From NCBI RefSeq assembly GCF_031769215.1, contig NW_026782129.1, positions 744,001 to 808,000 on the forward strand: DNA of 64,000 nucleotides, read 5' to 3'. The notes beneath the pieces were generated by a model. The model was not told the origin of the DNA, did not search any database, and saw only the letters and a list, made by a program, of their open reading frames with translations. Within the stretch, counting starts at the first letter, position 1, and each line of letters begins with the position of its first letter. The position numbers were made by a program, and so were the translations under genes. The stretch comes from Ylistrum balloti. Its lineage: Eukaryota. This document shows positions 7,001 to 43,791 of this stretch, in pieces.

Positions 7001-8973
7001 TGTAATGATAAAAATTCTGATGCAGGTTATTATCAGAAAAAGACAAGGGCCACCAAACTGGCAGATAATATGTAGCTATTACACAGAGGCAGCGAGGTGC
7101 AATACACATCCGACCCAATTTACATGTATGACCGCTCGTGTACTGTGTATATGTAAAACCTGGTATAGTTAGTTTGTCTAACAATCTTTCAAAATTATGG
7201 AGAACATAATCTAGGATTGCCAAGCGAAAGATAACACAGAGGGAATAGTTTTTCTTGGTCATTGGAGGCCACTTAAACAGTATTGTTACCTCCCTTGATT
7301 CATAACCTGAAATATATGACCAAGTTAAGGCAGCTTATCATAAGCGTCTAATTTGTCTATATTTACATATAAGGACATTTTATGCCAATACATTTCTAAT
7401 GACTGAAATCTCACGTGGTTTTACATACACCATTACATACATCGCTAGTATATCTCTATTGGATATATACTAGCGATTCAACTTTACAGTCTATCTGAAA
7501 CACGTGTACAACGAATTAATTCAGCTAAACTGTCTTTTCTTACATGTTTATTACCTCACCTTCACACTGTGCATATCTCACTGACAGAATGCAAAATTCA
7601 TACGCGCCTGAAAGTAATAGCATACCCGTGGAATGATTATCCTCCAGGATTTCTCACTGTCCATATTTTGTAATATAAAAGGGCTTTTTAGATAGATAGA
7701 GTTTTACAATTATTAAAATTCTGAACATTTCTGTGTCATCACTCGACGTAGAAATTCCTTATTATAGTGAAGAAGAAAGAAATTGCGCGAAGGCACAACT
7801 ATATTCTTTGTTAACGTAACAAAAAGCTCCTTGTTTCTTGTGTCCAAAGTAAGAGGGAATACTACATTACTGTATTCACATTTCCTAGATCAAACTGTTA
7901 TCTAAATTGGAGAGTGTGTCTCGTTTTATAGCCAGGTTCCTTTCTTTTTCTAGAGGATGTGAATACGCTACATCAATATTATCACTGACGCGGAAGTAAA
8001 CTGAGAGACGACTTTAGACAATTCGAAGATGCTGAAGTTAAACAAAATTATAAAGAAAAAGTGATAATCCTAGAGTGTTATTTATAGTTTTAAAATCCCT
8101 TAAACCTTATCAGAGGTCAAAGGTTATATCTTATTATCTGATGGTTATTTAGTATAGATTTCCTTTTGAGTTGCGCATGTACATGGAATTAATCGATAAT
8201 TACAAACCACGAGTTATAGGTAGTTATTAAGAGACAAAACTCGAAATTAATCAATTATATAATAAGCTATTTGTGAGTGAAGGCGACAAACAATCTGAAA
8301 TATTTCATAAAATGTCTTTATATAAAGAAACAAACTAAGGATCATCCTAATATCAAATTAACCAGGAGAAATGTTGGATTACTGGTGTGATTTTATGACA
8401 GTGAAAATATCATATATGACATTATCTCGTATAAACAGAGAAACAAGAGATATTCTGCATGAAAATATGAATAATCAAACTCCAACAGAACAAAATCTTA
8501 TGTTTTTGGTTAAAAATGCAATATTTTTGTTTACATTGTGTGTTTTTATAAACTGAGTTATATTTTATACATCATCCCGAGAGCACTCAGTATATAACAA
8601 CAAAACAGTACTTGATAATATACACATTACAAAATCAAAGAACGCACCAGTAGGTATGTGTTTCCTGTGTGCCAGGTATTTAAACCATATTGTCAGTGTG
8701 TGATCACAAACAATAACATGTTGAGATGGGTATCGTTGTAGAGCCAAATAAAACATGTCTGCCCTTAGCCAATAGATATGCCAAGTACACGTATCCCATC
8801 CGCTCATGTTCTTTTTATAGCCGTAACTAAGGAATCCCCACTATTGTTTAAACTAGTCTCAGACAATTAAGCTTGATTAGACCTGCAGTATACACCATTA
8901 AGCTATATATCGACGCCATATTTGTTTTGGTGCTTGACAGAGGAAATATCAAACCAGCTAAAATACATCAAAA

Positions 8974-11900
8974 ATGCCACCGAAGAAAAAAAAGAGCGGA
9001 AAAAAAGGGAAGAAGAGTGGAAAATCTGGGCGTGGATCACCTTCTAAATCGTATGGGGACGGTGTCAACGAAATGTCGAAAGATTTCGTATTTATGCAGA
9101 TTAGAGATTTAGAACTTCAGCTAATGAAGTAAGTAGAAATGTGCAATATATCACATATTTCATTATAACGAAAATATGATGTAAATATCCAACCGACCGA
9201 CGTCAATCAAGGCTTCATGCCTTACATCACTTTTATCAAATAATAAATTATATAATGTTTAATATAGTTAAATCTTAACCAACAATACGTATGTAACATA
9301 TATATTGTTCATTTCATTAGAATCTTAGATGATTACCCTGGCTTGATTTGTCCATGAATAATATATGTTGAAAACTATTCGCATTCGATCTTTGTAGTTA
9401 TCATCCGGGTTAAGTACCCATAAACTCTCGTTTATGTACAGAATTGTGAAACTGACACGTAAAAATGTGTGTCCCGGAATCATTAAAAGTGGGCTATCGT
9501 GATTAAGGACAAGATAATGGTTGATAGGTGAAGGGTCATTGCATGAAAATATTTAGATAAAATAACACTGTTTCATATGAAGGATATATTTATCTATGTA
9601 TTATTATGATCATTGATTCTTCAAGGTACCAAGCTAAAGCGGAAGAACTGGAGAAAAACCAGATTGTTCTGCAGGAAAAGCATGATGAGATGGCTAGAGA
9701 GAACGCCGACATAGAAAAGTTCTTTCAGGCTCAAGATAACGAAAAAGGTACACAAATGCTTTACATATTTTCACATTAGTATACGTGGTGAATATATACT
9801 AGAAATAAAGTGTTGCTTTATTAATTTCCTGACGTGTTTTGGTAAAATACTAGTATAGTGAAAAGACATGGCAAATTGCATATCAACTTCAACTACCAAA
9901 CAATTTCATATAAAAAAATGCTCACTTTTAATGTTTTAACTATGGAATGACATAACAGTATCGTTGAAACAGTCCAACAGTGGTTATTAGGCTGTTCAGA
10001 TGTAATGATAATTACAATAAGAAAAAAAAAACCTGGGTTTATTTTTGTCTGTGAACAATTACTTCTGAATGAAATCAATTATGTTCAGAACAAGAAAAAG
10101 CTCTGATCATGGAAGAGATAAACGGAGTACAAACGACACGGGAGGAAGAGAAGGAATGGGCTAATGGTCAGATTGACCAGATCCGACAGGACTTTCAGGA
10201 CACGAAAGAGAGGCTTACCGCAGAGAATAGCCTACTCAGTAAGTTTGAAATATTTCTACAACCCACACATATTAAAAATGTGTAGTATTGACAATGAGGC
10301 TGTAACTATGTAGATAACATTCACTCGCGTATCCATCATTGTTATTTGTGCACTGTGTTAAAGCCATCATTTTGGGGATTTGTACAGTTATTTTGGCGAA
10401 ATCGCAGGCAAGGAAAACATTAGAATTGACACATAAGGGTTTTAACACAATGTTGGCTTTTACACGGCACATTTTCTCTACACATGGCTCACTAATAAGT
10501 TGCTATAAACGCACGTGTTTTAGTGGTAGTATTACTTCATCAATTTTCGCGCTGAAACAATGGCGCTAAGATATGATTGTGCTAACTGCATTTTTTTTAT
10601 GTTGTTTTTTACCAGATAATTCATCTTTTCAGAACTAATGTTTGGCCAGAATCATAGAAAACTGAGAGATTGGAACAGCCTTGCCAAATAGTATAACACA
10701 ATATTTATATATATGTTATAAAAGTATAACATACTGATGTATTTAGTAAAATGTTATGTTATTTCATACGTAAGGTCAACAGCTGAATGAGTTAGAAGAT
10801 TTCAAATTGAAGAAAGAGGAACGAATAGCTCATGTGGCTGCCATGGAGGAGCATATGAAACAGAGCGACGAGGACCAGAAGTACATCATTGAAAACATCC
10901 GCTTAAAGGCAATTGTTGATAAAGACAGGTACGTTGTAATTCCAATTAAAGTTCAATGTTGATAAACATAGGTGCGTTATATTTTCGGTTAAAAACCATT
11001 ATTGATAAAGATAGATACGTTATATTTTCGGTTAAAAACCATTGTTGATAAAGATAGATGCGTTATATTTTCGGTTAAAAACCATTGTTGATAAAGATAG
11101 ATGCTTATATTTTCGGTTAAAAACCATTGTTGATAAAGATAGATGCTTGTATTTTCGGTTAAAACCATTGTTGATAAAGATAGATACGTTTTATTTTCGG
11201 TTAAAAACTTTTTTTGGATAAAGGCAGGTGCGTTACATTTCCTGTTTAAACATTGTTGAGAAAGACAGGCGCGTTATATATCCTGTTAATGGTCATCGTT
11301 GATAAAGACACGTGCGTGGTATTTCTTAGTGTACAATCCTTTATCAAGAATAGCATTTTTTTTCAATTTAATGACAATAAACCTGTTTACTATGTGAGAT
11401 TACTTAACAATGCGTAATATCAGAACCGTTCATAGAATGTCATGGACACTGACTGCTTAGCGATAAACCAAAGCTTAAACGTGTTCTTATCTGTCCTCTT
11501 TTCGTATATGAATCATACCAATCGTGTTTAATCAAACATTGATCATAATATTACACACGATACTTTATCATCAAGCAAATCTCGGCACCAAACAAATGAA
11601 GATGATGAAAATGGATTTATAACATTTTATGTTTTAAAATCTAAATACAGATTGAAAAAGGAAATGGTGGACCAGGTGAATCAGAGAGCTGCAGACTTTA
11701 GAAAGGTATCTAACAAACAAATGGCAGACACAACAAAGCGAGCTATCCGAGAGAATGTGTCGATACGAGGGGAGATAATTCAGACGTCAGACAAAACTAT
11801 CGAGTTAATGGCAGAAAATGCCGAGGTTCGCGCACGTGTAGCTGAACAGGAAGAACGAATAAAAATGTTGGAAGAAAGAGAAAAAGATCTTGCAAAGAAC

Positions 11901-21979: not shown

Positions 21980-24900
21980 CTACATGACACTGCACGGGGA
22001 TTCGCCTGATATGCGTGGAGGGGTGATTACCAGGTCAGTTCCCATATCAGTTGCTTCGGCAATCATCTTTTGGACAGGAGCGATGGTACAATGGCTGTTG
22101 TAAAGCCCACATTTATAGGATCCACCAGCTTCAGGCTTGGCGAGGCAAATGAAGCAGAATTTCTGGCCGCAGACACACACCATATGTTTACATGCTTGTG
22201 TGTGCTGTATCAACATTCCACATGTAGGACAGGCTCGGATCGACGGGCAACCTTTAAGGCCTACTATTGTTTTCAAGGAAGCTTCTTTCAAGATTTTAAG
22301 TCTTGGATCTTCTCCCGTACATGCAGTATTTCCGCAGCTAGTAATACCAGACGTTTTCCATTTACCGAGGCAATACCAGCAAAACTCATACCGTTCACCG
22401 CTTTTGCTGCAAGACAGACACAACACCCGTCTATCTTTGGAATTTTCTCGCATGCAGAATATTGAGCATTTTGGGCACTCTTGTATTCCAGCTGATTTTC
22501 GCATGTAGTTTTGAGAAAGTTTTGTCTCAAAATCATTCTTTTCTTCATCTGTTAGTACAGCGAGTCGCCGGACTATGAAATATTCCCATACTTGTCCACA
22601 GTATGTTGAATTTTCTCGATCTATATAGGGACAGTGGAACTGACATTTTCCAGCAGTAAGCAAACTTCTGCAATATGCAGTCAGAGATTCTGGACCTGTG
22701 GACGTGAAACAAAATCGCATTCAGACCATCAACGTAAGGTTACCGTTATCAGACGCATAAATATATTTAAAACAATCACTGAATACCAACACTAGGTATC
22801 CATATAAACGAGTTTCGATAGTTCTTTTTCGTTAGAGACACTTACTATAAGTGATATAATGTTGTGGATGTAAATATATTGTAGAGTTACTAACCAATGG
22901 CGTGTCCACATGGCATTTTTGCCCGTTGATTGTTGGGGTCATCATCCCATGTAATCATATCTGGTAGATCAGTTAATTCCACGCCATCGTCCAGCTGTTT
23001 AGGTTGGTGTTGTGGTGTGGGATCAGGGTCACTACCTCCCGGTAGTTGAAATACTACGAACAGCTGTGACCTGTCCTGGAGCTTATAATCAGACAGATAC
23101 ATCTTTTTCCCTTTTTTGGTCATCTCCAATTCTTTAGCTGTAATACATACATATTTTACAGGTATTATTTAATTAAAATTCAGTTGCATATTTATTTTAT
23201 ATGGTAATATATTTTTGTAACTAATTGATGCTCTACCTGCAAACAGGACATGTTGGCTTGTGGCTTCTATTCCGTTCCATTCGGAGATTTTTCTCATTAA
23301 GTCCTCAACAGATGCATCCTACAATTAATGGATAAAAGACGAATTAATCACATTCTAGTCATTATCTTTCATTCATGTTGAGAATTTAGGAAAATAACGT
23401 TTTAGTTCCGAAATCACATTAACACGTTGTATGCTTCCTGGCGGTAACAAGATGGTTGCGTCGATGTAGAATTGTGAATCGAAAATAAATGTTTGTTGAT
23501 CAGAGGTATTTTCAGTTCATGGCAGTAATAAATGTGTTATAAACCTTTACGAATTATTTGCGTCTGGCCAGACCGAGACATTACTAATATACAAAGTTTA
23601 TCTGCCGAAATATACGCTAACAAATTCCACTTAAAGACATCTGTGAATTTACTCAACGCCCTCTCGTTTACACTATCGGTCAGTAATGGCGGATGTCAGT
23701 CTTAAAGAGATAAACTCCCCAAGCATAAATCTGAAATCGATTGTTTACTACTCTTTTTTATCGCTATCACTTTAATTAATTTGTTAAAATAAAACTAAAT
23801 TCTACTTCAAACAAATTTCAATTTATCATGAGTTTTGGAAAAATGCCGTTCGATCTTATAATAATGTTAAAACGTCGTCTATGTCATGGCTAAGGCCATA
23901 CATACACAAGATGAAAGCATCCCCGAGGGTAGTAAATCAAAGGTATTTACATTTCGTAAAACATAATTCAGACAGAACTGACGAATTGTAAATAGCCTGG
24001 ACAACCAGTCATGACTAGGCGGTTCAATGTTCAGCTAGGACATGCTTTTCTTTTCCTTTACTGATTTTAGCGCTCAGAGGTTTTCAAATTCGTAAAGAGT
24101 TTTCTCATCAAATATCGAAAATGATATATGAGTTGCTTTGATGGGAGGGAGGGAGATACAACAAGGGACTGGTTTTGAGTTCAAGTAACGGAAGAAGATT
24201 TTATCTAAGCATCTAAAGTATTCGTAACCAGGTTTGGTTTTTTCATTTATTTTTGTAAAATGTTTCCATTTCGCCCACTCATACATCACTGGACCCCAAT
24301 ATTGAGACTTAAAGAAAATGATTTGCATTTTGTAGACATTTTGCCATCTTACATACAGTGATAAAAATACTTATCATCGATCTGCTTGTAATAATAATTA
24401 TAAAACGACCATGGATTATAAGACATTTCCCCTTTCTAATATCTGTCGATAATACTTCACAAAGGCATGTACTGAATAGATCTTTGTACAAATGTCACGG
24501 AAGAAACATCTTTCCAATTAATTATGCAAACTCGACAACATGACACGACTGTCAAGAACCGTATAAGGGTCCGAAAGGATGTTCTGAAGAAATCAGGAGG
24601 GAATACATTACGGTATGTTAGATGTATCTTTTAATAAAAATTCTCTTTAATTTGTTTTTTTATGACGATAGAATAAATCCCGAAAAAATTCGAAATCATG
24701 TTTGGTATCAAGATATCCATCAATATGTAGACATAAAAACACATTTGAATTATATTCCAATGTAAAACACTTTGAATAGCTATTTGGCGACTGTCAGTTT
24801 TGAAGTCTGTCTTCATTAAATACCGATACGAGATAAAGTAGTCCCATCAGTAACATACACATAGTAATTATACTTATTTTGTGTATATTTAAGGATATTT

Positions 24901-25214
24901 TTTCCCAGATGTAATAAAAACTTTATCATGTCGGCCATGACTACAGTGTTTTCTTTCAATAAGCTAACGGAATACCGAAGTTCCGAAGAACCGAAAGTGG
25001 CAGTTCCGAAGAACCGAAAGTGACAGTTCCGAAGAACCGAAAGTGGCAGTTCCGAAGAGCCGAAAGTGACAGTTCCGAAGAACCGAAAGTGACAGTTCCG
25101 AAGAACCGAAAGTGACAGTTCCGAAGAACCGAAAGTGAAAGTTCCGAAGAACCGAAAGTGGCAGTTCCGAAGAACCGAAAGTGACAGTTCCGAAGAAGCG
25201 AAAATGAAAGAGAA

Positions 25215-25250
<36 letters not shown>

Positions 25251-26082
25251 ATATTTCTCTATGTTAATATCCAAAAGGATAAACAACACAAAATACGAAA
25301 ATGTATTTCACGGCGACAGTGTCATCGCGACTGATTTATTAAACAAACATGTAAATCATACACTAATCTGTTACAAATACACCATATACAATGTATGTAT
25401 ATATATGTCACTCCTTTCCATTAATAACTATTACATTTTACCGCAACAGAAACCCCACACAGATGAACTTCTGTTACATTTTACCGCAAAATAAAACCCC
25501 ACACAGTTGAAATTGATAATGAGAAATAAAAATTTCTACGTCCGTGTGTCCCTACCTGTGACGCCGGAATGACACGTACAGGTAACACGCGACAGTACGA
25601 CACTGGTCTTAATTTGCACGTGCAAATCATACACATAGCGCCCCATATTAGCGACTCATACCACAGAGAAAATAATTTCACCCTAATTCCAAACCGTCAA
25701 ACGGTTGGAATTATATATATATGCGTGTGTGTACTACATATAAGGTGAAATACTATCTATGTTTCCTGATTCTGTCTAATAGAATTACAGTCAGTAAGTA
25801 GAGATTCTATTTTATCATACTTTTGTTTTTGTTTTCTATTGCTTTGTCCCATGTATAAGTGTATTTTGAGAGGTATATCATGCCGAATTTCACAAATTAA
25901 AGACGGAAACATAGCTATTTCTTGCCTTAATACTTGTAAATGTAATAGTTGTATCGCTGTATAATATACAGAGTACAAAGATCGATTTGTATCCAATATG
26001 TGAATTTACTTACTTTGTGTATGCTAAACGTTGTGTTCTTGTTACTGCCAGATGTAACAAGCAACTGTATCGTGTCGGCCAT
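21980..26082 (-). CDS. Ubiquitin-like domain + RBR (RING1-IBR-RING2) E3 ligase with C-terminal CaaX, 4 exons, 369 aa
   Basis: Exons 26082-26014 (MADTIQLLVTSGSNKNTTFSIHK|gtaagt), 23318-23237 (DASVEDLMRKISEWNGIEATSQHVLFA), 23137-22895 (AKELE...LFVVFQLPGGS...MPCGHAI), 22695-21980; phases 0,1,1 consistent, total 1110 nt. IBR CPKC...CLSC...CWYC...CGNTAC; RING2 CPTC...ACKHMVCVC...FCFIC; ends ESPCSVM*. Confidence 0.88.
24878..24976 (-). pseudogene. Dead duplicate (copy A) of exon 1 and proximal promoter of the Ubl-RBR gene
   Basis: Aligns to 26014-26118 (ATGGCCGAC...ACATCTGG...ATACACAAA). Exon-equivalent is 61 nt instead of 69 (frameshift) and the donor GTAAGT has become ATAAGT. Confidence 0.8.
24979..25210. 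repeat. 23-bp tandem array (9 full copies + 1 partial) followed by (AC)n
   Basis: Unit AGTTCCGAAGAACCGAAAGTG(A/G)C; ends GCGAAAATGAAAG; (AC)~16 at 25217-25248. Confidence 0.97.
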
Positions 26083-26210
26083 ATCTAAAGGTGTTTCTGT
26101 AATGATAACGGAAAACCCTACTTTCTGTTTGACAAGTAATTTTCAGCGGTGACGTCATAGCAGTTATTTCGCAAGTAAAACGAAAACGGAAGATAAATTG
26201 TTGATAATAG
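26083..26210 (-). promoter_or_regulatory. Putative proximal promoter/5'UTR of the Ubl-RBR gene with kB-like, CRE and IRF-like motifs
   Basis: GGAAAACCC at 26110-26118 (GGGTTTTCC on minus), perfect CRE TGACGTCA at 26150-26157, AAAACGAAAACGGAAG at 26177-26192; block conserved in copies at ~24.9 and ~34.2 kb. TSS not observed. Confidence 0.5.
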
Positions 26211-29200
26211 TTGAAAGTCAGTTATACTCCAACAGTAATATACTGGACGAGCATGAACAGTATTCACGGAGAACTTGTCTAAAGTTTCTCAATGTTCCTG
26301 TGCCCCAAGGGCAAGACGCCCGTACCTTCAATGCGCTAGGTGCTGTCCGAGATATCTGTGACCGACGATTAGGAATCCAGGTACAACAACATTCCATTTC
26401 CAGATGTCATCTGGTAGGCCCTATCAGGAACGGGAAAGCATCAGTCATCATCCGTTTCGTTCGCTACACTGACAGGGAAAAAAATTGACTCCAAAAAGGA
26501 ACTTAGGGGGTCGGGTATTCTCATTGTCGAGTCTTTGACAAAATCTCGACAAACTATTGTTCACGAGCTAAACCGTCGTAGACACGACAAGAAACTGTTT
26601 TCCTTCTGGACGAGAAACGGCAGGATCTTCGCCAAAAAAACCCAATGATTCCACGAAAACTCTAATAAAAACAATCAATGATATAAATGCCTTAGTTCCA
26701 GACTATACATACAGGCCCAAGTAAAAATAAAAAAAAATAGAATTTTTCACTTGCAATATCTATGGATTATCTATTTAAACATGCATACTAGTGATGATTG
26801 ATTGTATGCTTCACATTTGTATCACTAATATCATACTGTATTTTTGCATTATGTTCTGTTATCTCCATGGCTGTATTTTTTTTTATTTGTCAGTAAAGTT
26901 TGTTATACTTATTTTCTCCTTTTTTTGGAGTAAGGACTTGGAGTTGGACTAAGGAGTTGTGTAAAAATACATTTCTCTTATGTACAGGTATATATATATA
27001 TATCTACACACAATATACTACATTGTAACTAACGTGAACCGATAACTTCCTGTGTTATATTAGCGTGTTATCTTAGCGTGTTACTTTAGCAGTCACCTAA
27101 GTGTGTTGCCTAAACGCGCTACTTTAGAGTGTTATCCTACTTTGTACACTGTGTAGGGGTGCTACATAGTGTACAAAGTAATGTGGTACCTGCCTGGTAC
27201 AATTAACATCTGTACATAGATTTAGTCCGCATACTGAATATTGATACTTACGAACTCCTTTTCTTTAATGAGTCCGTCCGTCCGTCCTTTTAAATGATCA
27301 CACTTTGACTAAGGTATGTTATACAGGCAGATTATATACTGTGCTTGCTGCAACCTTATGTTAACGATAGTCCATTAGTATATTGTTTCTTACGTCTTAA
27401 CGTATCCCCATATTATGCATGTGTCCGTCCGTCCGTAAACTTATCCTGGGTAGTGCATATATACCGTGTAGTGCTCCATCCTTATGCTGACGACAGTTCA
27501 TGTGTATGTTGTCTTTTTTTTACGAATTCCTTTTTAATGCGTGCGTGCGTCCTTACGTTCGTCCACCCGTTAACTTTTTCTGGTACACAATGTTAAGTAA
27601 ACAGTACGGCCGTATACAATATATATGTTTAAAAATGTAATCTATGGTGCATACAAGTTTACGCACTGTACAATATGTTAAACTACTTTACCAGTAAGTG
27701 TTTAATAACTGTTGTTTTTGTATGTGTAGTGAGCAAATATAAGAATGTGAGTGTTGTTCATAAGTGTGTATGTGAGTTTATACATGTGTGTGATGCACGT
27801 GTATGTACGCTATGTAGTGTTACATATATATGTGTGTATGTGTATGTGTGTTGTGTATATTTACAGCTATGCGTGTATGTTTTGGATATGTTTGGGATGC
27901 GTATGTTATGCATGTGTATGCGTGTGAGTATGTGCTGTGAATGTAAGTGCGTGTATGCGATGTAATGTTTGAGAGAGGGTGAGTATGCGCGTGTGTGAGG
28001 GTGTGTGTGAGTGCGTTGAGTATATATGAATGTATATTTATATATGCACTTAGGTATTGACGCGTGTTTGTGTTTTAGATGTATTATAGTTTGTACGTGT
28101 GTACATGCCCTATATATACAATATACTTGATTATTTCATGTACTTGTTGCTTAGAGTGTGCTGCCTTATATTTGGTTGTACATTAATATATGTAATTATA
28201 AGTGTGTATGTATATACTGTATATTGAAATATTGCCCTTTTTTACATGAAATTTTTCATTTTTGTATGCTCACATCAAGGCTTATTTTGTTCTTTTCTTC
28301 TCAGTTACGCAGATAAACAAAACCTTTTGCTGGTTTGCACACTGTCTACTATGCATGATACCGTTTCGCTATTTTGTAAACTTACGTCTCGGTTTATTTG
28401 ATAATGGGTAATTCTTACATGTGTCACAGAATAGCGATCGGTATCTTCTGTTCAAAGGTCTACGGTAAAATGCGTTATGAAATCACTTCTATTTCTATCA
28501 TTAAATCTCAGGTTAATTTTAAGCATGTTCGACTGTTGTCGTCTTTGTCTCTCTTGGTCAATCTATAGTTTAAATAAATTAACGCTCTCCTGTTTTCAAA
28601 ATTTTGAATTTTCAGTAATCTTGTTGCTACTTTTATTGCAACATATGGACATTGAATCCAATCCTTGCTCGGGGCTTAACGAGCTATCGATTTTTCACCT
28701 TAATATCAGAAGTGTTAGGAATAAACTTGATTATGTAGAAGATATAGCAGGTGAGAATATGTCTAACAGAAACTCATTTAGATGATCAGATACCTACAGA
28801 TGATTTACTTATAGCTGGATTTCATGAACCTTTTCGACTTGATAGGAATTTTGCTGGTGGAGGTGTTCTGGTCTACATAAACGATCTTCTAAAAGTAAAC
28901 CGCTTAACGGAGTTAGAATTTCCCGGAGATAGGTAATTTGGATTAAAATCACACTAACCAATTCCTCCTTCATTATAGGTACAGCATATAGACCAGAAAA
29001 TTCTGTGTTACCCTTTTGGGACAATTTGCGTACATCTATTAATAATGCTTTAACACCAAATATAATAGTAACTGGCGATTTAAATGTCGACTTACTAACT
29101 GCATCTACTAACCATTATCTTTTCGAAATTATAAGTTCTTTTAGTATGATTAATGTCATAAACGAACCAACTCGTACTGGACCAACTCGATCCAGCCTTC

Positions 29201-32200
29201 TGGATCCCATTCTCTTAACTCAGTCTATTTCTTGTATTGATTCTTCTATAATACCAGTTGATAAATCCTTCAGTGATCATGATAGCTGTACTGCTTGTGT
29301 TAATCTTCCATGTGCTTTTAAATCTATTTATAAGCGTAAAATTTGGCTATATAAAAGGGCTGATTTCCGAACGTTCAATAATCTTATTTCTAATTATGCT
29401 TGGAATGATCTTTCCCTTTGTAACGGATGCGTACTGTCAGTTCGTTACCAAGTTCTATCTTGGACCCAGTAACAGTTTAACAAATAGTAAAATGCCCACC
29501 ATATATATACAAAATACTGGCCTGTCTACCTGACTCAAATAATGATATAAACTATACGAATTCAATAACTATACTCTAAACTACACCCGGTAGATAACTA
29601 ACATTTATTGCACCTTAACACTGACATGTATAGAGTCTCAATACCAACTAAAACACTATATCACATATATACCCGCCACCCTGTGTCGGTAGTAACTAAT
29701 TAACCTTTTACCACAACACCCGTTACTGTACAAACTTGACCGTGACACACTTTGACCACGTCAGCCTTCAACGCGACACACGTGCATTGACTGCGTCACC
29801 TTTTGCCTCAACCACTTGGACCAAGTCAGCTATACACTGTGTCTCGGCAAAACCTGTGCCTCGGTACCCTGTCACTGTACCTGATCAACTTCACATCACT
29901 GTGATCTCCCGTGACTTTGCACATTTGTATAAGACGTGTAAGAATTATTGGTTCCGATTTTAAAGGATTACAGTGGAGCCCTAACTTATTCAGCTAGGCC
30001 CAAACTTTTTCAGCTTGGTCACTGTTACCTTTTATTTTCAGCTAGAGATCCTTTGCGTTCGTCTGTCAGCATTCGAGAGAGAGCTTTTCGTCTGGTGGAA
30101 CCTCTATTTATACGACTACCCATCTAATGAAATGCCTTCTTTCAAACAACCAATCAAAAGTGCCCTTTTTTTACAAACTACAGAAATAACTGCTACAAGT
30201 CTACACTGCTAATCCTTTATTGTGTAATGTTGTAAATCACATGGAATCAATCGTTTCACCTTAATTGTAACTCGCTTGATATTGCTTTGATATTGCTTGT
30301 GAACGTTTTACTGATATTTTTTTTAAATTTTGCGAATTCATGCATTCCATCTAAAGTAGTCACTATTAGACCTAATGATAAAACTTGGATGACCTCTGAA
30401 TAAAGGAAAAAAATGAGAATTCGTGATAGGTTACATAAAATCGCGAGGTCAACCAAGCTTCTTTCGGATGTTTACAAATTTAAGTCTCAACGAAATAAGG
30501 TTAACAACATGAAAAACACGCCCGTTTATTATTTTATGAGAATGTTCATGGTATAATTGAAGAATTTGTGTCTTCTGATCTAAAATCTTATTGGAGACTT
30601 ATTAAAAGGTTAATGAATTCAACTGGAACTTCACATTCTATTCCTTCTCTTGTAGATCCTCACAAAATAATGTTGTTACTAATGATGAAGACAAAGCTAA
30701 CTTATAAAATGACTATTTTTGTAATATTACACAAGTCGATGATAGAAACACTGCAGTTCCTGTAGTTGAGTCTAAAACCAACAAAACGTTTAGTTCTGTA
30801 AGAGTAAATAGAAATGAAATCCGTGATGTTTAACAGATATTGAAGCTCGGAAAGGCCTCGGGTGAGGATGGGATAAGTCATCATATGTTAAGAAATACAT
30901 CACAAACTGTTTGTATTCCACTTGAAATTATTTTTAACATGTCTTTATCGTCAGGTATATTTCCAGCCAATTGGAAAGTAGCAAAAGTTATGCCACTTTT
31001 AAAAAAGGTGACAGGCATTCTCCCTCTAACTATAGACCGATTTCTCTTCTATCTACTGTTGGAAAAGTCTTAAAAAAAAAGCGTGTTATTTTCAAACATC
31101 TACATAATTATTTCGTTGAAAATTCATTGTTTTATAAACACCAGTCTGGCTTTATGCATGCACATTCTACTGTATATCAGCTCATTGAAATTTATCACAA
31201 TATTTGTATTGCTCTTGAAGAGAAAAAAACATGTATGTATGGTCTTCTGTGATATTTCTAAAGCATTCGATCGTGTTTTGCATAAAGGTTTGATGGCAAA
31301 ATTAAAATCGTACGGACTTTGTGGTGAGCTATTTACGTGGCTAGAAAACTATGTATTTAATAAGCAGCAGAAAGTTTTCCTAAATAGTGTTTATTCTCAA
31401 TTAGGTTCAAACTCAGCAGGGGTTCCTAAAGGTTCCATTCTTGGACCACTTTTGTTTCTTATATACATAAATGATATTGCCGATGTCCTTGAATCATCTG
31501 CTCGTCTTTTTGCAGACGATACTTCTTTACTAAAGTCTTCCTCATCATGTCTTGAAATCCAAACTGTCTTAAATAGGGATCTTGATTCTTTAAACTTTTG
31601 GGCTAAAACTTGGTTGGTTACTTTCAATCCAGACAAAACTGAGGTAATATTTATTTCTAATTCGATTGACATTGATGATGATTTAGACCTGAAGTTAGAC
31701 GGGAAAGATTTGAATTTTACTGATCATCATAGGCACTTGGGGGTAAATTTTGATTCCAGTGCAAAATGGGGAGATCATATCAATGCTACATATATATATA
31801 TGTTATGAAGAAAATCAATGTCTTAAGAAGGTTGAAATATTTGTTAAATAGAAATAGTCTCTTAAAAATTTACAAAGCTTTCATTTTACCACTTTTAGAG
31901 TATGCGTGTGAATTGTGGGACGGTTGCACTAATACTGAATCGGATAAATTAGAAAAAGCCCAAAGAGAAGCTGCTCGTATCATAACTGGCCTTCCTCCTT
32001 ATACACGTATAGGAGATTTACATTTTGAAACTGGTTTAGATACAATTTGGAATCGTCGAAAACGAAGAAAACTTCAACTTTTATTTAAGATGCATAACAA
32101 GATAACTCCAGATTATTTAAACGATCTCTTACCACCTATTGTTGCAGATACTAACCAATACAATCTTAGAAATAACAATGATTATAGAGTTCCTCTATTT

Positions 32201-32852
32201 GGGCTTTCTCTTACAAACCTCTCTTTTATACCTTCTACGCTTCGTAGCTGGAACTTGTTAGATTTCTCTGTACGGTCACTACCTTCCATAAATTTGTTTA
32301 AAACCTCAATTACTTTAAATACACAACAATCCCCACCTATCTATTTTAGTTATGGTGAACGGAAGTTAAACATAATACATACTAAACTTAGACACAGTTG
32401 TAGTTCCCTTAAATAGATCTTTATCGAGTAAATCTAGCCGAAAATCCAGTGTGCTCCTGTGGACATCCTTGTGAGAATGCCTTTCACTTCTTCTTTGAGT
32501 GTCAAACTTTCAGAAATGAAAGACGCATTTTGTTCCATAATCTGGCTGAATTAGAAGTAGATTTGAATTTAGAGCTTCTTTTGTTTGGTAGTATTGATCT
32601 TTCTGAGGACCTAAACTATTTTGTCTTTACACATTTCATTAAATCCAGCAAAAGGTTTTAAAGATTCTTACACAGTGATGTATTTATGTCTGTGTGCGAA
32701 TGCTTAATATGTATAATTTATGTTTAAGCCTATATCTGTATAAGCACGTATTTGAAAATGTATGATGGGAGAAGGCTCCAATAAGTTGTAATAACTTGTG
32801 CCCCATTCCCTTGTTCAAATTTATTTTGGCAATAAAATATGTTTAAACTAAC
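26211..32852 (+). mobile_element. CR1/L2-group non-LTR retrotransposon, 5'-truncated within ORF1, decayed
   Basis: Flanked by 12-bp TSD TGTTGATAATAG (26199-26210, 32853-32864). ORF1 remnant ~26211-26650 (EQYSRR...VIIRF...VESLT...WTRNGRIF). ORF2 ~28480-32660 with endonuclease (HLNIRS, CLTETHL, GDLN), RT (FCDISKAFDRV, GVPKGSILGPLLFLIYINDI, LFADDT) and CSCG...HFFFEC. 3' end AATAAAATATGTTTAAACTAAC. Multiple frameshifts and stops. Confidence 0.93.
29419..30258. mobile_element. Solo LTR (840 bp, probably Gypsy-type) inserted into LINE ORF2
   Basis: Termini TGTAACG...CGTTTCA, 4-bp TSD CCTT on both sides; removal restores the ORF2 frame W-N-D-L-S-L-N-C-N-S-L-D-I-A. Confidence 0.8.
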
Positions 32853-34149: not shown

Positions 34150-34350
34150 TCGTCCATTACCAGGATTAAACACTAAAATAATACTTAAAAGAAATGTTTC
34201 ATGTCGGCCATATTTACAGGTGTTTACAAGGGAATACCTACTTTCAGTTTGACAAGTCCCCATTAGCGGTGATGTCAAATCAGTTATTTCCCAAGTAAAA
34301 ACGATAATGAAAGTAAAGTTTTGACAATAAAATGACAAGATGTATTGAAA
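34150..34350 (-). pseudogene. Third, degenerate copy (copy C) of the Ubl-RBR promoter and start codon
   Basis: TCATGTCGGCCATATTTACAGGTGTTT...CCTACTTTCAGTTTGACAAGT...AGCGGTGATGTCA...CAGTTATTTCCCAAGTAAAA aligns to 26070-26210. ATG at 34211 reads MADMKHFF then stop. Confidence 0.7.
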
Positions 34351-41500: not shown

Positions 41501-43791
41501 CCAGTAAACCGACATTGTCATTATGTATAGTTACAGGTCAGTATACCGACATTGTCATTATCGAAGTTACAGGTCAGTATACTGACATTGTCATTATGTA
41601 TAGATACAGGTCAGTATACCGACATTGTTATTTTGTGCAGTTACATGCCAGTATACCGACATTGTTATTATGTATAGTTACAGGTCAGTATACCGACATT
41701 GTCATTATGTGTAGTTACAGGTCAGTATACTGACATTGTCATTATGTGTAGTTACGGGTCAGTATACCGACATTGTCATTATGTGTAGTTACAGGTCAGT
41801 ATATCGACATTGTCGACATTTGAGCATACTGACATTATCCCTATGTGATGTTACATTTAAGCATACTGACATTACTCCCTATGTGATGTTACATTTGAGC
41901 ATACTGACATTATCCCTATGTGATGTTACATTTGAGCATACTGACATTATCCCTATGTGATGTTACATTTGAGCATACTGACATTATCCCTATGTGATGT
42001 TACATTTGAGCATACTGACATTATCCCTATGTGATGTTACATTTGAGCATACTGACATTATCCCTATGTGATGTTACATTTGAGCATACTGACATTATCC
42101 CTATGTGATGCTACATTTTAGCATACTGACATTATCCCTATGTGATGTTACATTTTAGCATACTGACATTATCCCTATGTGATGTTATATTTCAGTATAT
42201 CACGTTTTCATTTTGTGAAGTTTCATGTCAATTCATATTTCTTAGTGATTCATTAGATTCCTAAATGTTATGCTACCTTCTTATCATCTTTTTGTTAAAA
42301 TGTTTATAAATGAATTGAAATTTATCCTTAATCAAACTTCATTTACTCCAGTAGGGTTCGGCTTTTCGCTGGCCTTTGTGTCAGGTATGAAATCTGTTGG
42401 CGAATACTTCAGTGGTAAAGCCAAACTTATTGCTATTGCATTCACTGGTACCGGATCTACATGTGGTGCAATCACTTTACCATTCCTGCTGGACTTCTTG
42501 ATCAACGCGTACGGATGGCGTGGATGTCTACTTATAATGACTGGACTCGTGGGAAACATCATATGTTTCTTCAGTGTCTGTGAATCTTTGTCAAATCATC
42601 GGCAGATCAATGCCAAAACAATTAGAATTTATATGACAGGAAATAGTGGCTCACGTAATAAGCAAACTACATATCAGACAAAGTTAAAATCACTGGTAAG
42701 AAACTGTGTATTTATCATGTTCACCTTTGGAATTTCCTTGACACTTTCCGCCTTCGGTTCAGCGTTGGTTTATCTGGTGGAATTTCTTCAGACTAAAGGA
42801 TATGAAAGACATGAAGCATTACTACTGTACACTTACATGAGTGTATCCAACACTTTTGGTAGATTACTACCCGGTATGTGCACACTCATACCTCAAATGA
42901 AAGTACTCGCTATATCCGTGATATTCACAAGCATGAGTACGTTTTCAACTGCCTGTCTTCCGTCTGCGACCATGTACTACCAACATGTGTTTCTAGTGTG
43001 TGTCTTCGGAATGACGATTGGGTGCAATGACACGTGTATGTCGATGACAACGATGGAGCTTGTAGGATTAGAGAATTATGCCGTCGGACTTGGTATCCTG
43101 ATGACAGTGGCAGGTTTGAGTTGTATTTGCGCTGGAACTGTGTTTGGTAAGTAATAACAAAAATCCGATTTATATGATAGTTATGGCATTTTCATGCGTA
43201 GATGAATATTTGTCACTTTGTTTCAAAATATTAGGTACAATGGTTGAATCATGAATATCTATTCTTTAGAAAACATAAGAATTATTAAGTCTTTATACTA
43301 TTGTGTCGGTATTACATGTTATCACGTTTTGTATACTATGTAGTGTTATATATAAACTATATAAGATGGTTAATTTGCTAAATATATATTAGAATACTTT
43401 AATTGTTTAATTGTACCTTAAGAGCTATTTCCCTTTCCATGTTAATTCCGGATATTTCATTCCGTATTCTTTTTCATTTACTTTTTCCGGATAATTGGTT
43501 TCTTATATTATGTAATCTTTGTCATGAAGAAGTTTTGTAAAATACAGAAGTATGAGAAGCCAAAATTGAGATACGTCCTTGTTTTGGATGTTTTCCTGTA
43601 CTGCACAGTAGATGATATAAAATAACTCGGTTATTGCAGGTTGGTTAGTAGATGTTACGGGATCGTATGGTGCGTCCTATTACAGCGTGGCAGCTGCCCA
43701 TGCCACGGCCCTCTGTCTCTTTATTTTGGCTGCCGTTTTACAGAAAAGCCAACGGAGGAGAGTCTCTTCCATTGACAAGTTACCGGCATAG
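35554..43791 (+). CDS. Monocarboxylate transporter (SLC16)-like MFS protein, 4 exons, ~424 aa
   Basis: Exons 35554-35746, 39735-39872, 42355-43146, 43640-43791; GT-AG, all phase 1, total 1275 nt. Motifs W-V-V-L...EFLRVFGESKAKTALVQS, VDKYGVRK, GFGFSLAF...VGEYF, YGWRGCLLI, NTFGRLL, GWLVDVTGSY. Confidence 0.9.
36223..39202 (-). mobile_element. 5'-truncated L1/Tx1-clade LINE, antisense in MCT intron 1
   Basis: RT motifs LPKGDKP...KNWRP, DQTGFI.GRYIGEN, DFEKAFDSVSW, GCRQGDPI, SQYADDT; C-terminal CYHC...ETIIHAIWEC; A-rich tail with AATAAA near 36223-36255. Frameshifted; no TSD seen. Confidence 0.92.
39866..41810. repeat. 37-bp minisatellite starting at the MCT exon 2 donor (~53 copies)
   Basis: Unit GTCAGTATACCGACATTGTCATTATGTGTAGTTACAG; first copy overlaps the exon end GTTACAG|GTCAGT. 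Confidence 0.97.
41811..42195. repeat. Second 37-bp minisatellite block (~10 copies), related to the first
   Basis: Unit CATTTGAGCATACTGACATTATCCCTATGTGATGTTA; shares TACYGACATT and TATGTG...GTTACA but lacks AG|GT. Confidence 0.95.

What the first reader, a model, noticed from the sequence alone, without database searches (positions are those of the whole stretch)
24979..25210. Tandem array of IRF-consensus sites in the promoter slot of a dead exon-1 copy, inside the live gene's intron 1
Seen: 8 of 9 units contain AACCGAAAGT; the unit 7/8 junction gives GAAAGTGAAAGT (25131-25142); the array ends GAAAATGAAAG. It occupies the place of the ~65-bp CRE-containing segment found in copies B and C, between GGAATACC and CGAAAATGAAAG. 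Known: AANNGAAA and GAAANNGAAA are IRF-E/ISRE cores, and molluscs have IRF and Rel factors. Inference: a minisatellite-built, copy-number-tunable immune enhancer for the Ubl-RBR gene.
Basis: partly seen in the sequence, partly recalled or inferred. Interest (0 to 1): 0.7.

Follow-up and report, generated by a model that had tools for sequence, protein, structure and literature searches.

The report
Promoter-derived minisatellite with IRF-like half-sites
A 230-base tandem repeat in the first intron of a scallop ubiquitin-ligase gene grew out of an interferon-response-like piece of a decayed spare promoter; it is most likely an ordinary young minisatellite, not a shown immune switch.

Summary
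At 24979-25207 there are ten head-to-tail 23-bp units, 94% alike. The unit occurs nowhere else in the 648-Mb genome, so it is not a transposon repeat.

The array lies in intron 1 of a minus-strand Ubl-RBR ligase gene. It sits directly 5' of a decayed exon-1 copy, in place of a 63-bp CRE-containing segment kept in two other copies.

New here: the IRF-like motif is inherited, not chance. The unit core AACCGAAAGTGACAGT matches 14 of 16 bases of a distal promoter element, AACCGAAAATGAAAGT, in the Pecten maximus orthologue. The array ends in that same element.

Against an enhancer:
- Only 2 of 10 positions keep the two-half-site core.
- The array and the dead exon copy are absent from two other scallop species.
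- Minisatellites fill about 13% of the sampled DNA.
- The surrounding intron is full of transposon debris.

Verdict: a young, probably neutral minisatellite that multiplied a promoter half-site. An enhancer role is possible at roughly 15%.

The parts
24979..25210 (.). Minisatellite of 10 units of 23 bp (consensus AGTTCCGAAGAACCGAAAGTGAC on the + strand). In gene orientation it reads GTCACTTTCGGTTCTTCGGAACT.
   Evidence: TRF result, units printed in register, and unique in the 648-Mb genome.
25199..25210 (.). CGAAAATGAAAG, the ancestral distal ISRE-like element of promoter copy A. It forms the last unit and flank of the array and holds one of the two GAAANNGAAA cores.
   Evidence: It aligns with CGAAAACGGAAG in B, CGATAATGAAAG in C and CGAAAATGAAAG in P. 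maximus.
25131..25142 (.). GAAAGTGAAAGT at the unit 7/8 junction. This is the second GAAANNGAAA core. It exists because unit 7 ends in A where the other internal units end in C.
24939..24978 (-). Remnant of the 5' leader and proximal promoter of copy A, including GGAATACC at 24969-24976.
   Evidence: Alignment A1.
24870..24938 (-). Decayed copy A of exon 1. ATGGCCGAC starts at 24938. It has 8 nt of deletions relative to B, and the donor GTAAGT has become ATAAGT.
   Evidence: Alignment A1, and the sequence.
25217..25248 (.). (AC)16 microsatellite abutting the array.
25254..25722 (.). Dispersed repeat of about 470 bp, with 40 or more copies in the genome at 70-95% identity. It is a transposon-like insertion in intron 1, next to copy A.
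26014..26082 (-). Intact exon 1 (copy B), encoding MADTIQLLVTSGSNKNTTFSIHK, with donor GTAAGT at 26013-26008.
   Evidence: tblastn with the P. maximus and A. irradians proteins and the sequence.
26083..26209 (-). Proximal promoter and leader of the intact gene. It holds an IRF-like AACAGAAAGT (26129-26120), a kappaB-like GGGTTTTCC (26118-26110), the CRE TGACGTCA (26150-26157) and a degenerate distal element CGAAAACGGAAG (26181-26192).
26215..27400 (+). 5' end of a dispersed repeat that begins about 130 bp upstream of the ATG. Endonuclease and reverse-transcriptase ORFs follow on the + strand at 29005-32416, so it looks like a LINE.
34192..34329 (-). Copy C: the promoter module plus ATGGCCGACATG, followed by an early stop.
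23237..23318 (-). Exon 2, the middle of the ubiquitin-like domain.
22895..23137 (-). Exon 3, the end of the ubiquitin-like domain, the linker and the start of the RBR region.
21981..22695 (-). Exon 4, the RBR (IBR) region and the stop codon.

Best explanation
The array is a young, locus-specific minisatellite. A roughly 250-300-bp piece holding the promoter, exon 1 and the start of intron 1 of a scallop Ubl-RBR ligase gene was duplicated into the gene's own first intron (copy A) and then decayed. In that dead copy, a roughly 23-bp stretch containing the distal ISRE-like element (ancestrally AACCGAAAATGAAAGT) was amplified head to tail, by replication slippage or unequal exchange. In the process the 63-bp CRE-containing segment of the copy was lost or condensed. 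Each unit therefore carries one IRF monomer consensus, AACCGAAA(GT), by descent. The full two-half-site core survives only at the array's edge and at one junction recreated by a point change. The array most likely has no selected function. At most it is a cluster of weak IRF half-sites about 0.9-1.1 kb downstream of the start codon that could add some IRF occupancy. Shown: the array, its uniqueness, its position, the gene model, and the similarity of the unit to the orthologue's promoter element. Inferred: the order of events, the slippage mechanism, and neutrality.
For: - The array and its homogeneity.
- The unit occurs only here in 648 Mb, apart from one 3-mismatch match of the kind chance would give.
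- The gene model rests on homology to the P. maximus and A. irradians proteins. Exon 1 is at 26082-26014 and exon 2 at 23318-23237, so 24870-25210 is intronic.
- Copy A aligns to B over exon 1 and into the intron, with 8 nt of deletions and a lost GT donor.
- The unit core matches the P. maximus distal promoter element at 14 of 16 bases, P = 0.0015 against 2000 shuffled units. The array merges into the same element at 25199-25210.
- Only 2 GAAANNGAAA and no GAAANNGAAACT occur in the array.
- No dead exon copy and no 11-mer of the unit were found in the P. maximus or A. irradians loci. P. maximus intron 1 carries an unrelated 29-bp array.
- There are 23 minisatellite arrays covering 13% of 122 kb sampled from this genome.
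- The neighbouring intron sequence is a repeat with 40 or more copies, and short repeat fragments lie on the other side.
Against: - The half-site AACCGAAAGT is kept in 8 of 10 units. It is a good IRF monomer consensus (AANNGAAA, PMC3167601).
- The source promoter seems to carry IRF-like elements that are conserved between scallop genera and also present in a paralogue. A cluster of ten such sites inside the same gene could therefore bind the same factors.
- Tandem repeats with many copies of one factor's motif can be strong enhancers (PMC13373173).
- With only about 8 variant positions among the units, there is no power to tell conservation from recent amplification.
- Similarity of the unit to copies B and C alone is not significant (P = 0.55 and 0.22). 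The descent argument rests on the P. maximus match and on position.
Confidence: 0.65

Rival explanations
1. The array is a working IRF-responsive enhancer in intron 1. Its ten IRF sites recruit molluscan IRFs after viral or dsRNA stimulation and boost transcription of the Ubl-RBR gene, and copy-number changes tune the response.
For: - There are ten AANNGAAA-type sites in 230 bp, about 47 per kb against 2.1 per kb in the background.
- The motif derives from a promoter element conserved with P. maximus.
- The intact promoter, copy C and P. maximus share AAC[A/T]GAAAGTAGG. In B a kappaB-like GGGTTTTCC follows it.
- A 78%-identical paralogue has GAAAACGAAAGT and CAAAGTGAAAGT 77-114 nt upstream of its ATG.
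- The genome has at least 4 loci with IRF DNA-binding domains.
- Oyster and scallop IRFs activate or bind ISRE (PMC5557890, PMC13524488).
- A homotypic tandem-repeat enhancer is a published precedent (PMC13373173).
Against: - Eight of ten units lack the second half-site that ISRE and IRF-E dimers use.
- The sites are 23 bp apart, not in the 2-nt-spacer arrangement.
- The array is absent in two other scallop species.
- It sits in a dead promoter copy among transposon debris.
- One of 22 other minisatellites in this genome also carries the core.
- More distant bivalve members of the gene family show no consistent ISRE near the ATG.
- No expression, binding or polymorphism data could be obtained.
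Confidence: 0.15
2. The resemblance is chance. The 23-bp unit is unrelated to the promoter element and contains an IRF-like core only because short A-rich motifs are common.
For: The AANNGAAA background is 2.1 per kb, so about 5% of random 23-bp units would carry one. One of 22 other arrays does. Local alignment of the unit to copies B and C is no better than for shuffled units (P = 0.55 and 0.22).
Against: The 14-of-16 match to the P. maximus element has P = 0.0015. The array directly abuts the homologous element in copy A, and its last unit grades into it. A 27-column alignment to copy C spans nearly the whole unit.
Confidence: 0.12
3. Copy A with its array is not dead. It serves as an alternative promoter or non-coding first exon inside intron 1, giving a transcript that lacks the normal exon 1.
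For: Copy A keeps ATGGCCGAC, part of the leader and the distal element. First introns often hold alternative starts (general knowledge).
Against: The GT donor is lost (ATAAGT), the reading frame is shifted by 8 nt of deletions, and the CRE and proximal element are gone. No transcript evidence was obtainable.
Confidence: 0.05

Closest known systems
Minisatellites / VNTRs in introns and promoters (for example the human INS-VNTR, PMC3012191, and genome-wide human VNTRs linked to expression, PMC8096271)
   Same: Head-to-tail units of 10-100 bp, specific to one locus, homogeneous units with more diverged edge units, located in the non-coding part of a gene, and potentially variable in copy number.
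   Different: Copy-number variation and any effect on expression are unshown here. The unit can be traced to a specific promoter element of the same gene.
Tandem-repeat enhancers with homotypic transcription-factor motif clusters (the MORC3-repressed IFNB1 enhancer with 45 PU.1 sites, PMC13373173)
   Same: One factor's motif is multiplied by tandem repetition near an immune-type gene.
   Different: That element has up to 61 motifs, is conserved as a motif cluster across species, and has proven chromatin and enhancer activity. This array has 10 half-sites, is absent from two related species, and is untested.
ISRE / IRF-E / PRDI-type IRF-binding elements (IRF consensus AANNGAAA, PMC3167601; GAAANNGAAA two-half-site cores)
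   Same: Every unit but one contains AANNGAAA, and two positions contain GAAANNGAAA. The GAAAGTGA string recalls the PRDI hexamers (recalled from memory, so a lead only).
   Different: Most units have a single half-site and the sites are 23 bp apart. There is no full GAAANNGAAACT. Binding is untested.

Membership tests
Minisatellite / VNTR | Tandem head-to-tail units of about 10-100 bp | tested here: met
   Period 23 bp, 10.0 copies, 94% matches, no indels.
Minisatellite / VNTR | Specific to one locus rather than dispersed | tested here: met
   A pattern search of the whole 648-Mb genome with up to 3 mismatches found 10 hits in the array and one isolated 3-mismatch hit on contig C955.
Minisatellite / VNTR | Copy number varies among individuals | not testable with these tools
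No second haplotype copy is in the assembly.
ISRE / IRF-E element | IRF core AANNGAAA | tested here: met
   There are 11 matches on the + strand of the array. Nine of ten units have AA/AGNNGAAA-type cores: 8 exact AACCGAAAGT, the last unit AAGCGAAA, and unit 4 broken to AGCCGAAA.
ISRE / IRF-E element | Two half-sites with a 2-nt spacer (GAAANNGAAA) | tested here: not met
   Found at only 2 positions in the array (25131-25140 and 25200-25209). The 23-bp consensus unit has none.
ISRE / IRF-E element | Full ISRE consensus GAAANNGAAACT | tested here: not met
   No matches in the array or anywhere in the window.
ISRE / IRF-E element | Bound by an IRF protein and confers inducible transcription | not testable with these tools
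   This needs EMSA, DAP-seq or reporter assays. Only the presence of IRF genes and published ISRE activity of mollusc IRFs (PMC5557890, PMC13524488) are available.
Transposon subterminal or internal repeat | The unit recurs at many unrelated loci | tested here: not met
   The unit and the array are unique. The flank 24500-24975 is unique as well. The repeats at 25254-25722 and from 26215 onward are separate elements.
Homotypic-motif tandem-repeat enhancer | The motif cluster is conserved at the locus across related species | tested here: not met
   No 11-mer of the unit and no AANNGAAA-bearing array occur in the gene region of the P. maximus (L034) or A. irradians (L035) orthologous loci.
Homotypic-motif tandem-repeat enhancer | Open chromatin and enhancer activity | not testable with these tools
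   No chromatin or expression data were reachable.

The most novel reading that the evidence does not exclude
A dead, duplicated promoter inside intron 1 was recycled. Tandem amplification of its ISRE-derived half-site built a copy-number-variable, IRF-responsive intronic enhancer for a ubiquitin-like/RBR ligase gene that belongs to the scallop antiviral programme. This would be an invertebrate example of an immune enhancer born from a minisatellite.
Probability: 0.12. Interest if true: 0.6.

Novelty: new member of a known kind. Interest (0 to 1): 0.3.

Why it matters
As it stands, this is a clean worked example of how a minisatellite is born from a recognisable regulatory element in a decaying promoter duplicate. 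It also shows that a tandem array of 'consensus sites' is one event, not ten.

The more useful by-product concerns the intact promoter. In the intact gene, its P. maximus orthologue and a paralogue, IRF-like sites lie within about 130 bp of the ATG, and in the intact gene a kappaB-like site follows. This marks the Ubl-RBR ligase as a candidate virus-inducible gene in scallops, which could be tested with a simple challenge experiment.

If the array did prove to be an IRF-dependent, length-variable enhancer, it would link repeat instability to heritable variation in an invertebrate antiviral response.

Tried and rejected
- **Transposon origin of the unit.** Rejected: the unit is unique in the genome.
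- **Transcripts of this species in the protein collection.** The best hit, P0001, is 78% identical to the window's gene and 89-92% identical to the C162 paralogue. It therefore comes from another species, and no inference about expression is possible.
- **Family-wide ISRE test.** In Mytilus, Ruditapes, Mercenaria, Dreissena and Gigantopelta relatives, only 2 of 5 have a GAAANNGAAA within 400 nt of the ATG, which is not clearly above background. The test is inconclusive because the true transcription starts are unknown. The look-up for the Mya protein found no record.
- **L1-type ORF1 guess.** I guessed that 26198-26488 encodes an L1-type ORF1. Pfam gave no support. The stretch is nevertheless a dispersed repeat.
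- **Open reading frames across the array** (24816-25289 minus strand and 25135-25494 plus strand). No Pfam family matched; they are by-products of a stop-free repeat.
- **Rfam scan of 23000-27000.** Nothing found.
- **Single-strand DNA folding of the array.** z = -1.5, unremarkable.
- **STAT, HSE, NF-kappaB, CRE, ETS and EICE consensus scans of the array.** No matches other than bare GGAA.
- **Literature.** No paper mentions DDB_G0292642-type ligases, or IBR-domain genes in oyster antiviral responses.
- **Joined coding sequence.** The joined (spliced) coding sequence was not built or searched. Exons were checked one by one through tblastn.

Full report
**1. Is it there?**

Yes. Tandem Repeats Finder reports an array at 24979-25207 with period 23, 10.0 copies, 94% matches and no indels. 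Its consensus is AGTTCCGAAGAACCGAAAGTGAC.

Read in register, eight units carry AACCGAAAGT exactly. That is 8 matches, all inside the array, against 0.15 expected in the window. Unit 4 has GAGCCGAAAGT, and the tenth unit is diverged (AAGCGAAAATGAA). GAAAGTGAAAGT is at 25131-25142, and the array runs into CGAAAATGAAAG at 25199-25210. An (AC)16 run follows at 25217-25248.

**2. The setting**

The window comes from a 648-Mb eukaryotic assembly. The large ORF at 21980-22720 on the minus strand is the RBR part of a ubiquitin-like/RBR ligase ('DDB_G0292642-like'). Its closest named relatives are in the scallops Argopecten irradians and Pecten maximus.

tblastn with those two proteins places four exons on the minus strand:

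| Exon | Coordinates | Notes |
|---|---|---|
| 1 | 26082-26014 | encodes MADTIQLLVTSGSNKNTTFSIHK; donor GTAAGT |
| 2 | 23318-23237 | |
| 3 | 23137-22895 | |
| 4 | 22695-21981 | |

Splice sites were read. I did not build or search a joined coding sequence; the exons were checked one at a time.

Intron 1 therefore spans about 26013-23319 and contains the array. The P. maximus locus has an MFS transporter gene upstream in divergent orientation, as the window does (MFS ORF at 42270-43154). The loci are therefore orthologous.

**3. The three copies**

A short module consisting of promoter, leader and the start of exon 1 occurs three times in the window.

- **Copy B**, with ATG at 26082, is the intact one.
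- **Copy A**, with ATG at 24938, aligns to B through exon 1 and about 25 nt into the intron. It has 8 nt of deletions, and its donor GTAAGT has become ATAAGT. It is dead as a coding first exon.
- **Copy C**, with ATG at 34211, keeps the promoter and ATGGCCGACATG, then runs into a stop.

In B and C exactly 63 nt lie between GGAAAACC/GGAATACC and CGAAAACGGAAG/CGATAATGAAAG. This segment includes a perfect CRE (TGACGTCA) in B and TGATGTCA in C. In A the same two landmarks are 222 nt apart, and the array fills the gap.

**4. Is the unit a transposon repeat?**

No. A pattern search of the whole genome with up to three mismatches finds only the ten units here, plus one isolated three-mismatch hit. 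BLAST of the array and of modules B and C finds only themselves.

The neighbours are repeats, however:
- 25254-25722 is an element of about 470 bp with at least 40 copies.
- Short repeat fragments lie at 23400-23560 and around 24230-24400.
- A dispersed repeat begins at about 26215, only about 130 bp upstream of the live ATG. Endonuclease and reverse-transcriptase ORFs follow on the + strand, so it looks like a LINE.

**5. Where the IRF-like motif comes from**

I aligned the promoters in gene orientation and scanned for motifs. Two findings came out.

First, a proximal element AAC[A/T]GAAAGTAGG lies 38-52 nt upstream of the ATG in B, C and P. maximus. In B it is followed by GGGTTTTCC.

Second, a distal element lies about 90-110 nt upstream. 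It reads AACCGAAAATGAAAGT in P. maximus, which is a clean GAAANNGAAAGT. It is degenerate in B (CGAAAACGGAAG) and in C (CGATAATGAAAG). In A it is intact as CGAAAATGAAAG, exactly at the end of the array.

The array unit contains AACCGAAAGTGACAGT, which matches the P. maximus element at 14 of 16 bases. Only 0.15% of 2000 shuffled units aligned as well. An alignment to copy C spans almost the whole unit: TTCCGAAG---AACCGAAAGTGACAGT against TTCCCAAGTAAAAACGATAATGAAAGT. That alignment, and the one to B, are not significant on their own (P = 0.22 and 0.55).

I conclude that the unit is a piece of the old promoter that included the distal ISRE-like element, and that this piece was amplified in tandem.

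Two junction models fit:
- The unit once held the complete GAAANNGAAAGT, and a GAAA-to-GACA/GGCA variant then spread through the array.
- The GTGAC at the unit boundary comes from the CRE half-site (GGTGACGT), as MAFFT prefers. In that case the internal units never had the second half-site.

Either way the result is the same. Internal units carry one IRF monomer site. The two complete cores are the ancestral flank (25200-25209) and a single C-to-A change in unit 7 (25131-25140).

**6. Is it more than chance, and does it look selected?**

The density of AANNGAAA in the array (47 per kb against 2.1 per kb in the rest of the window) reflects one unit repeated ten times. At the background rate about 5% of random 23-bp units would contain the core.

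Among 22 other minisatellites found in 122 kb of this genome, one contains it. Those 23 arrays cover 13% of the DNA sampled, and 8.7 kb of the 64-kb window. Minisatellites are therefore a mass phenomenon in this genome.

The array, and the dead exon copy itself, are absent from the orthologous loci of P. maximus and A. irradians. P. maximus intron 1 has an unrelated 29-bp array instead. With about eight variant positions among the units, one of which breaks the core in unit 4, there is no power to detect constraint.

None of the STAT, HSE, NF-kappaB, CRE, ETS or EICE consensus patterns occurs in the array. Its single-strand folding is unremarkable. No Rfam family or Pfam domain maps to it.

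**7.

- AANNGAAA is the accepted IRF consensus (PMC3167601).
- The genome has at least four loci with IRF DNA-binding domains.
- Oyster IRFs activate ISRE and IFN-beta reporters (PMC5557890). Oyster and scallop IRFs are reported to bind ISRE (PMC13524488, citing earlier work).
- The gene's own promoter appears to be built around IRF-like sites. In P. maximus the promoter window is the densest AANNGAAA cluster in the gene region (4 in 250 nt).
- A 78%-identical paralogue on another contig, whose promoter is not alignable at the DNA level, has GAAAACGAAAGT and CAAAGTGAAAGT 77-114 nt upstream of its ATG, plus GGATTTTCC. In random 250-nt windows of this genome a GAAANNGAAA is expected only 4.4% of the time.
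- Tandem repeats carrying many copies of one factor's motif can be potent immune enhancers in mammals (PMC13373173).

A test in five more distant molluscan family members was inconclusive. No paper links this ligase family to mollusc antiviral responses.

**8. Verdict**

The resemblance to IRF sites is real and inherited. The functional claim remains a hypothesis.

The most economical reading is a recent, probably neutral expansion inside a dead promoter copy that lies in a repeat-laden intron (about 65%). A working IRF-responsive, length-variable enhancer remains possible (about 15%).

The decisive data are expression after challenge, chromatin accessibility, IRF binding and array-length polymorphism.

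Noticed in passing
window 26110-26129 (minus strand); also 34229-34249 and L034 about 9949-9972: A proximal element AAC[A/T]GAAAGTAGG is conserved in B, C and P. maximus. In B it is followed by the kappaB-like GGGTTTTCC, all within about 30-50 nt upstream of the ATG. From memory, the IRF-then-Rel order recalls PRDI-PRDII of IFN-beta. It suggests the Ubl-RBR gene itself may be immune-inducible.
   Followed up: partly
G000:C162:1404790-1404916 (L033 about 8790-8917): The promoter of a 78%-identical paralogue carries GAAAACGAAAGT and CAAAGTGAAAGT (on the reverse strand, at -77 and -114) and GGATTTTCC (at -124). It cannot be aligned with the window's promoter at the DNA level.
   Followed up: partly
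window 26215-32416: A dispersed repeat begins only about 130 bp upstream of the live start codon. Endonuclease and reverse-transcriptase ORFs follow on the + strand, so it looks like a LINE. It has cut the gene off from whatever lay further upstream.
   Followed up: partly
window 25254-25722: A dispersed repeat of about 470 bp, with at least 40 copies in the genome at 70-95% identity. It lies immediately beside the (AC)16 run and the array. Its type was not determined.
   Followed up: no
whole window: Ten minisatellite arrays with periods of 23-79 bp cover 8.7 kb of the 64-kb window (13.5%). The same fraction holds in 58 kb of other loci from this genome.
   Followed up: partly
window 34192-34329: A third copy (C) of the promoter module keeps TGATGTCA and the proximal IRF-like site, but its exon remnant stops after 8 codons. 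It lies 8 kb upstream of the live gene, beyond the LINE-like insertion. Whether it drives any transcript is unknown.
   Followed up: no
L034 20883-25475 (Pecten maximus): A 4.6-kb minisatellite of 39-bp units (about 117 copies) lies just downstream of the orthologous gene. This shows that large minisatellites are common in scallop genomes generally.
   Followed up: no
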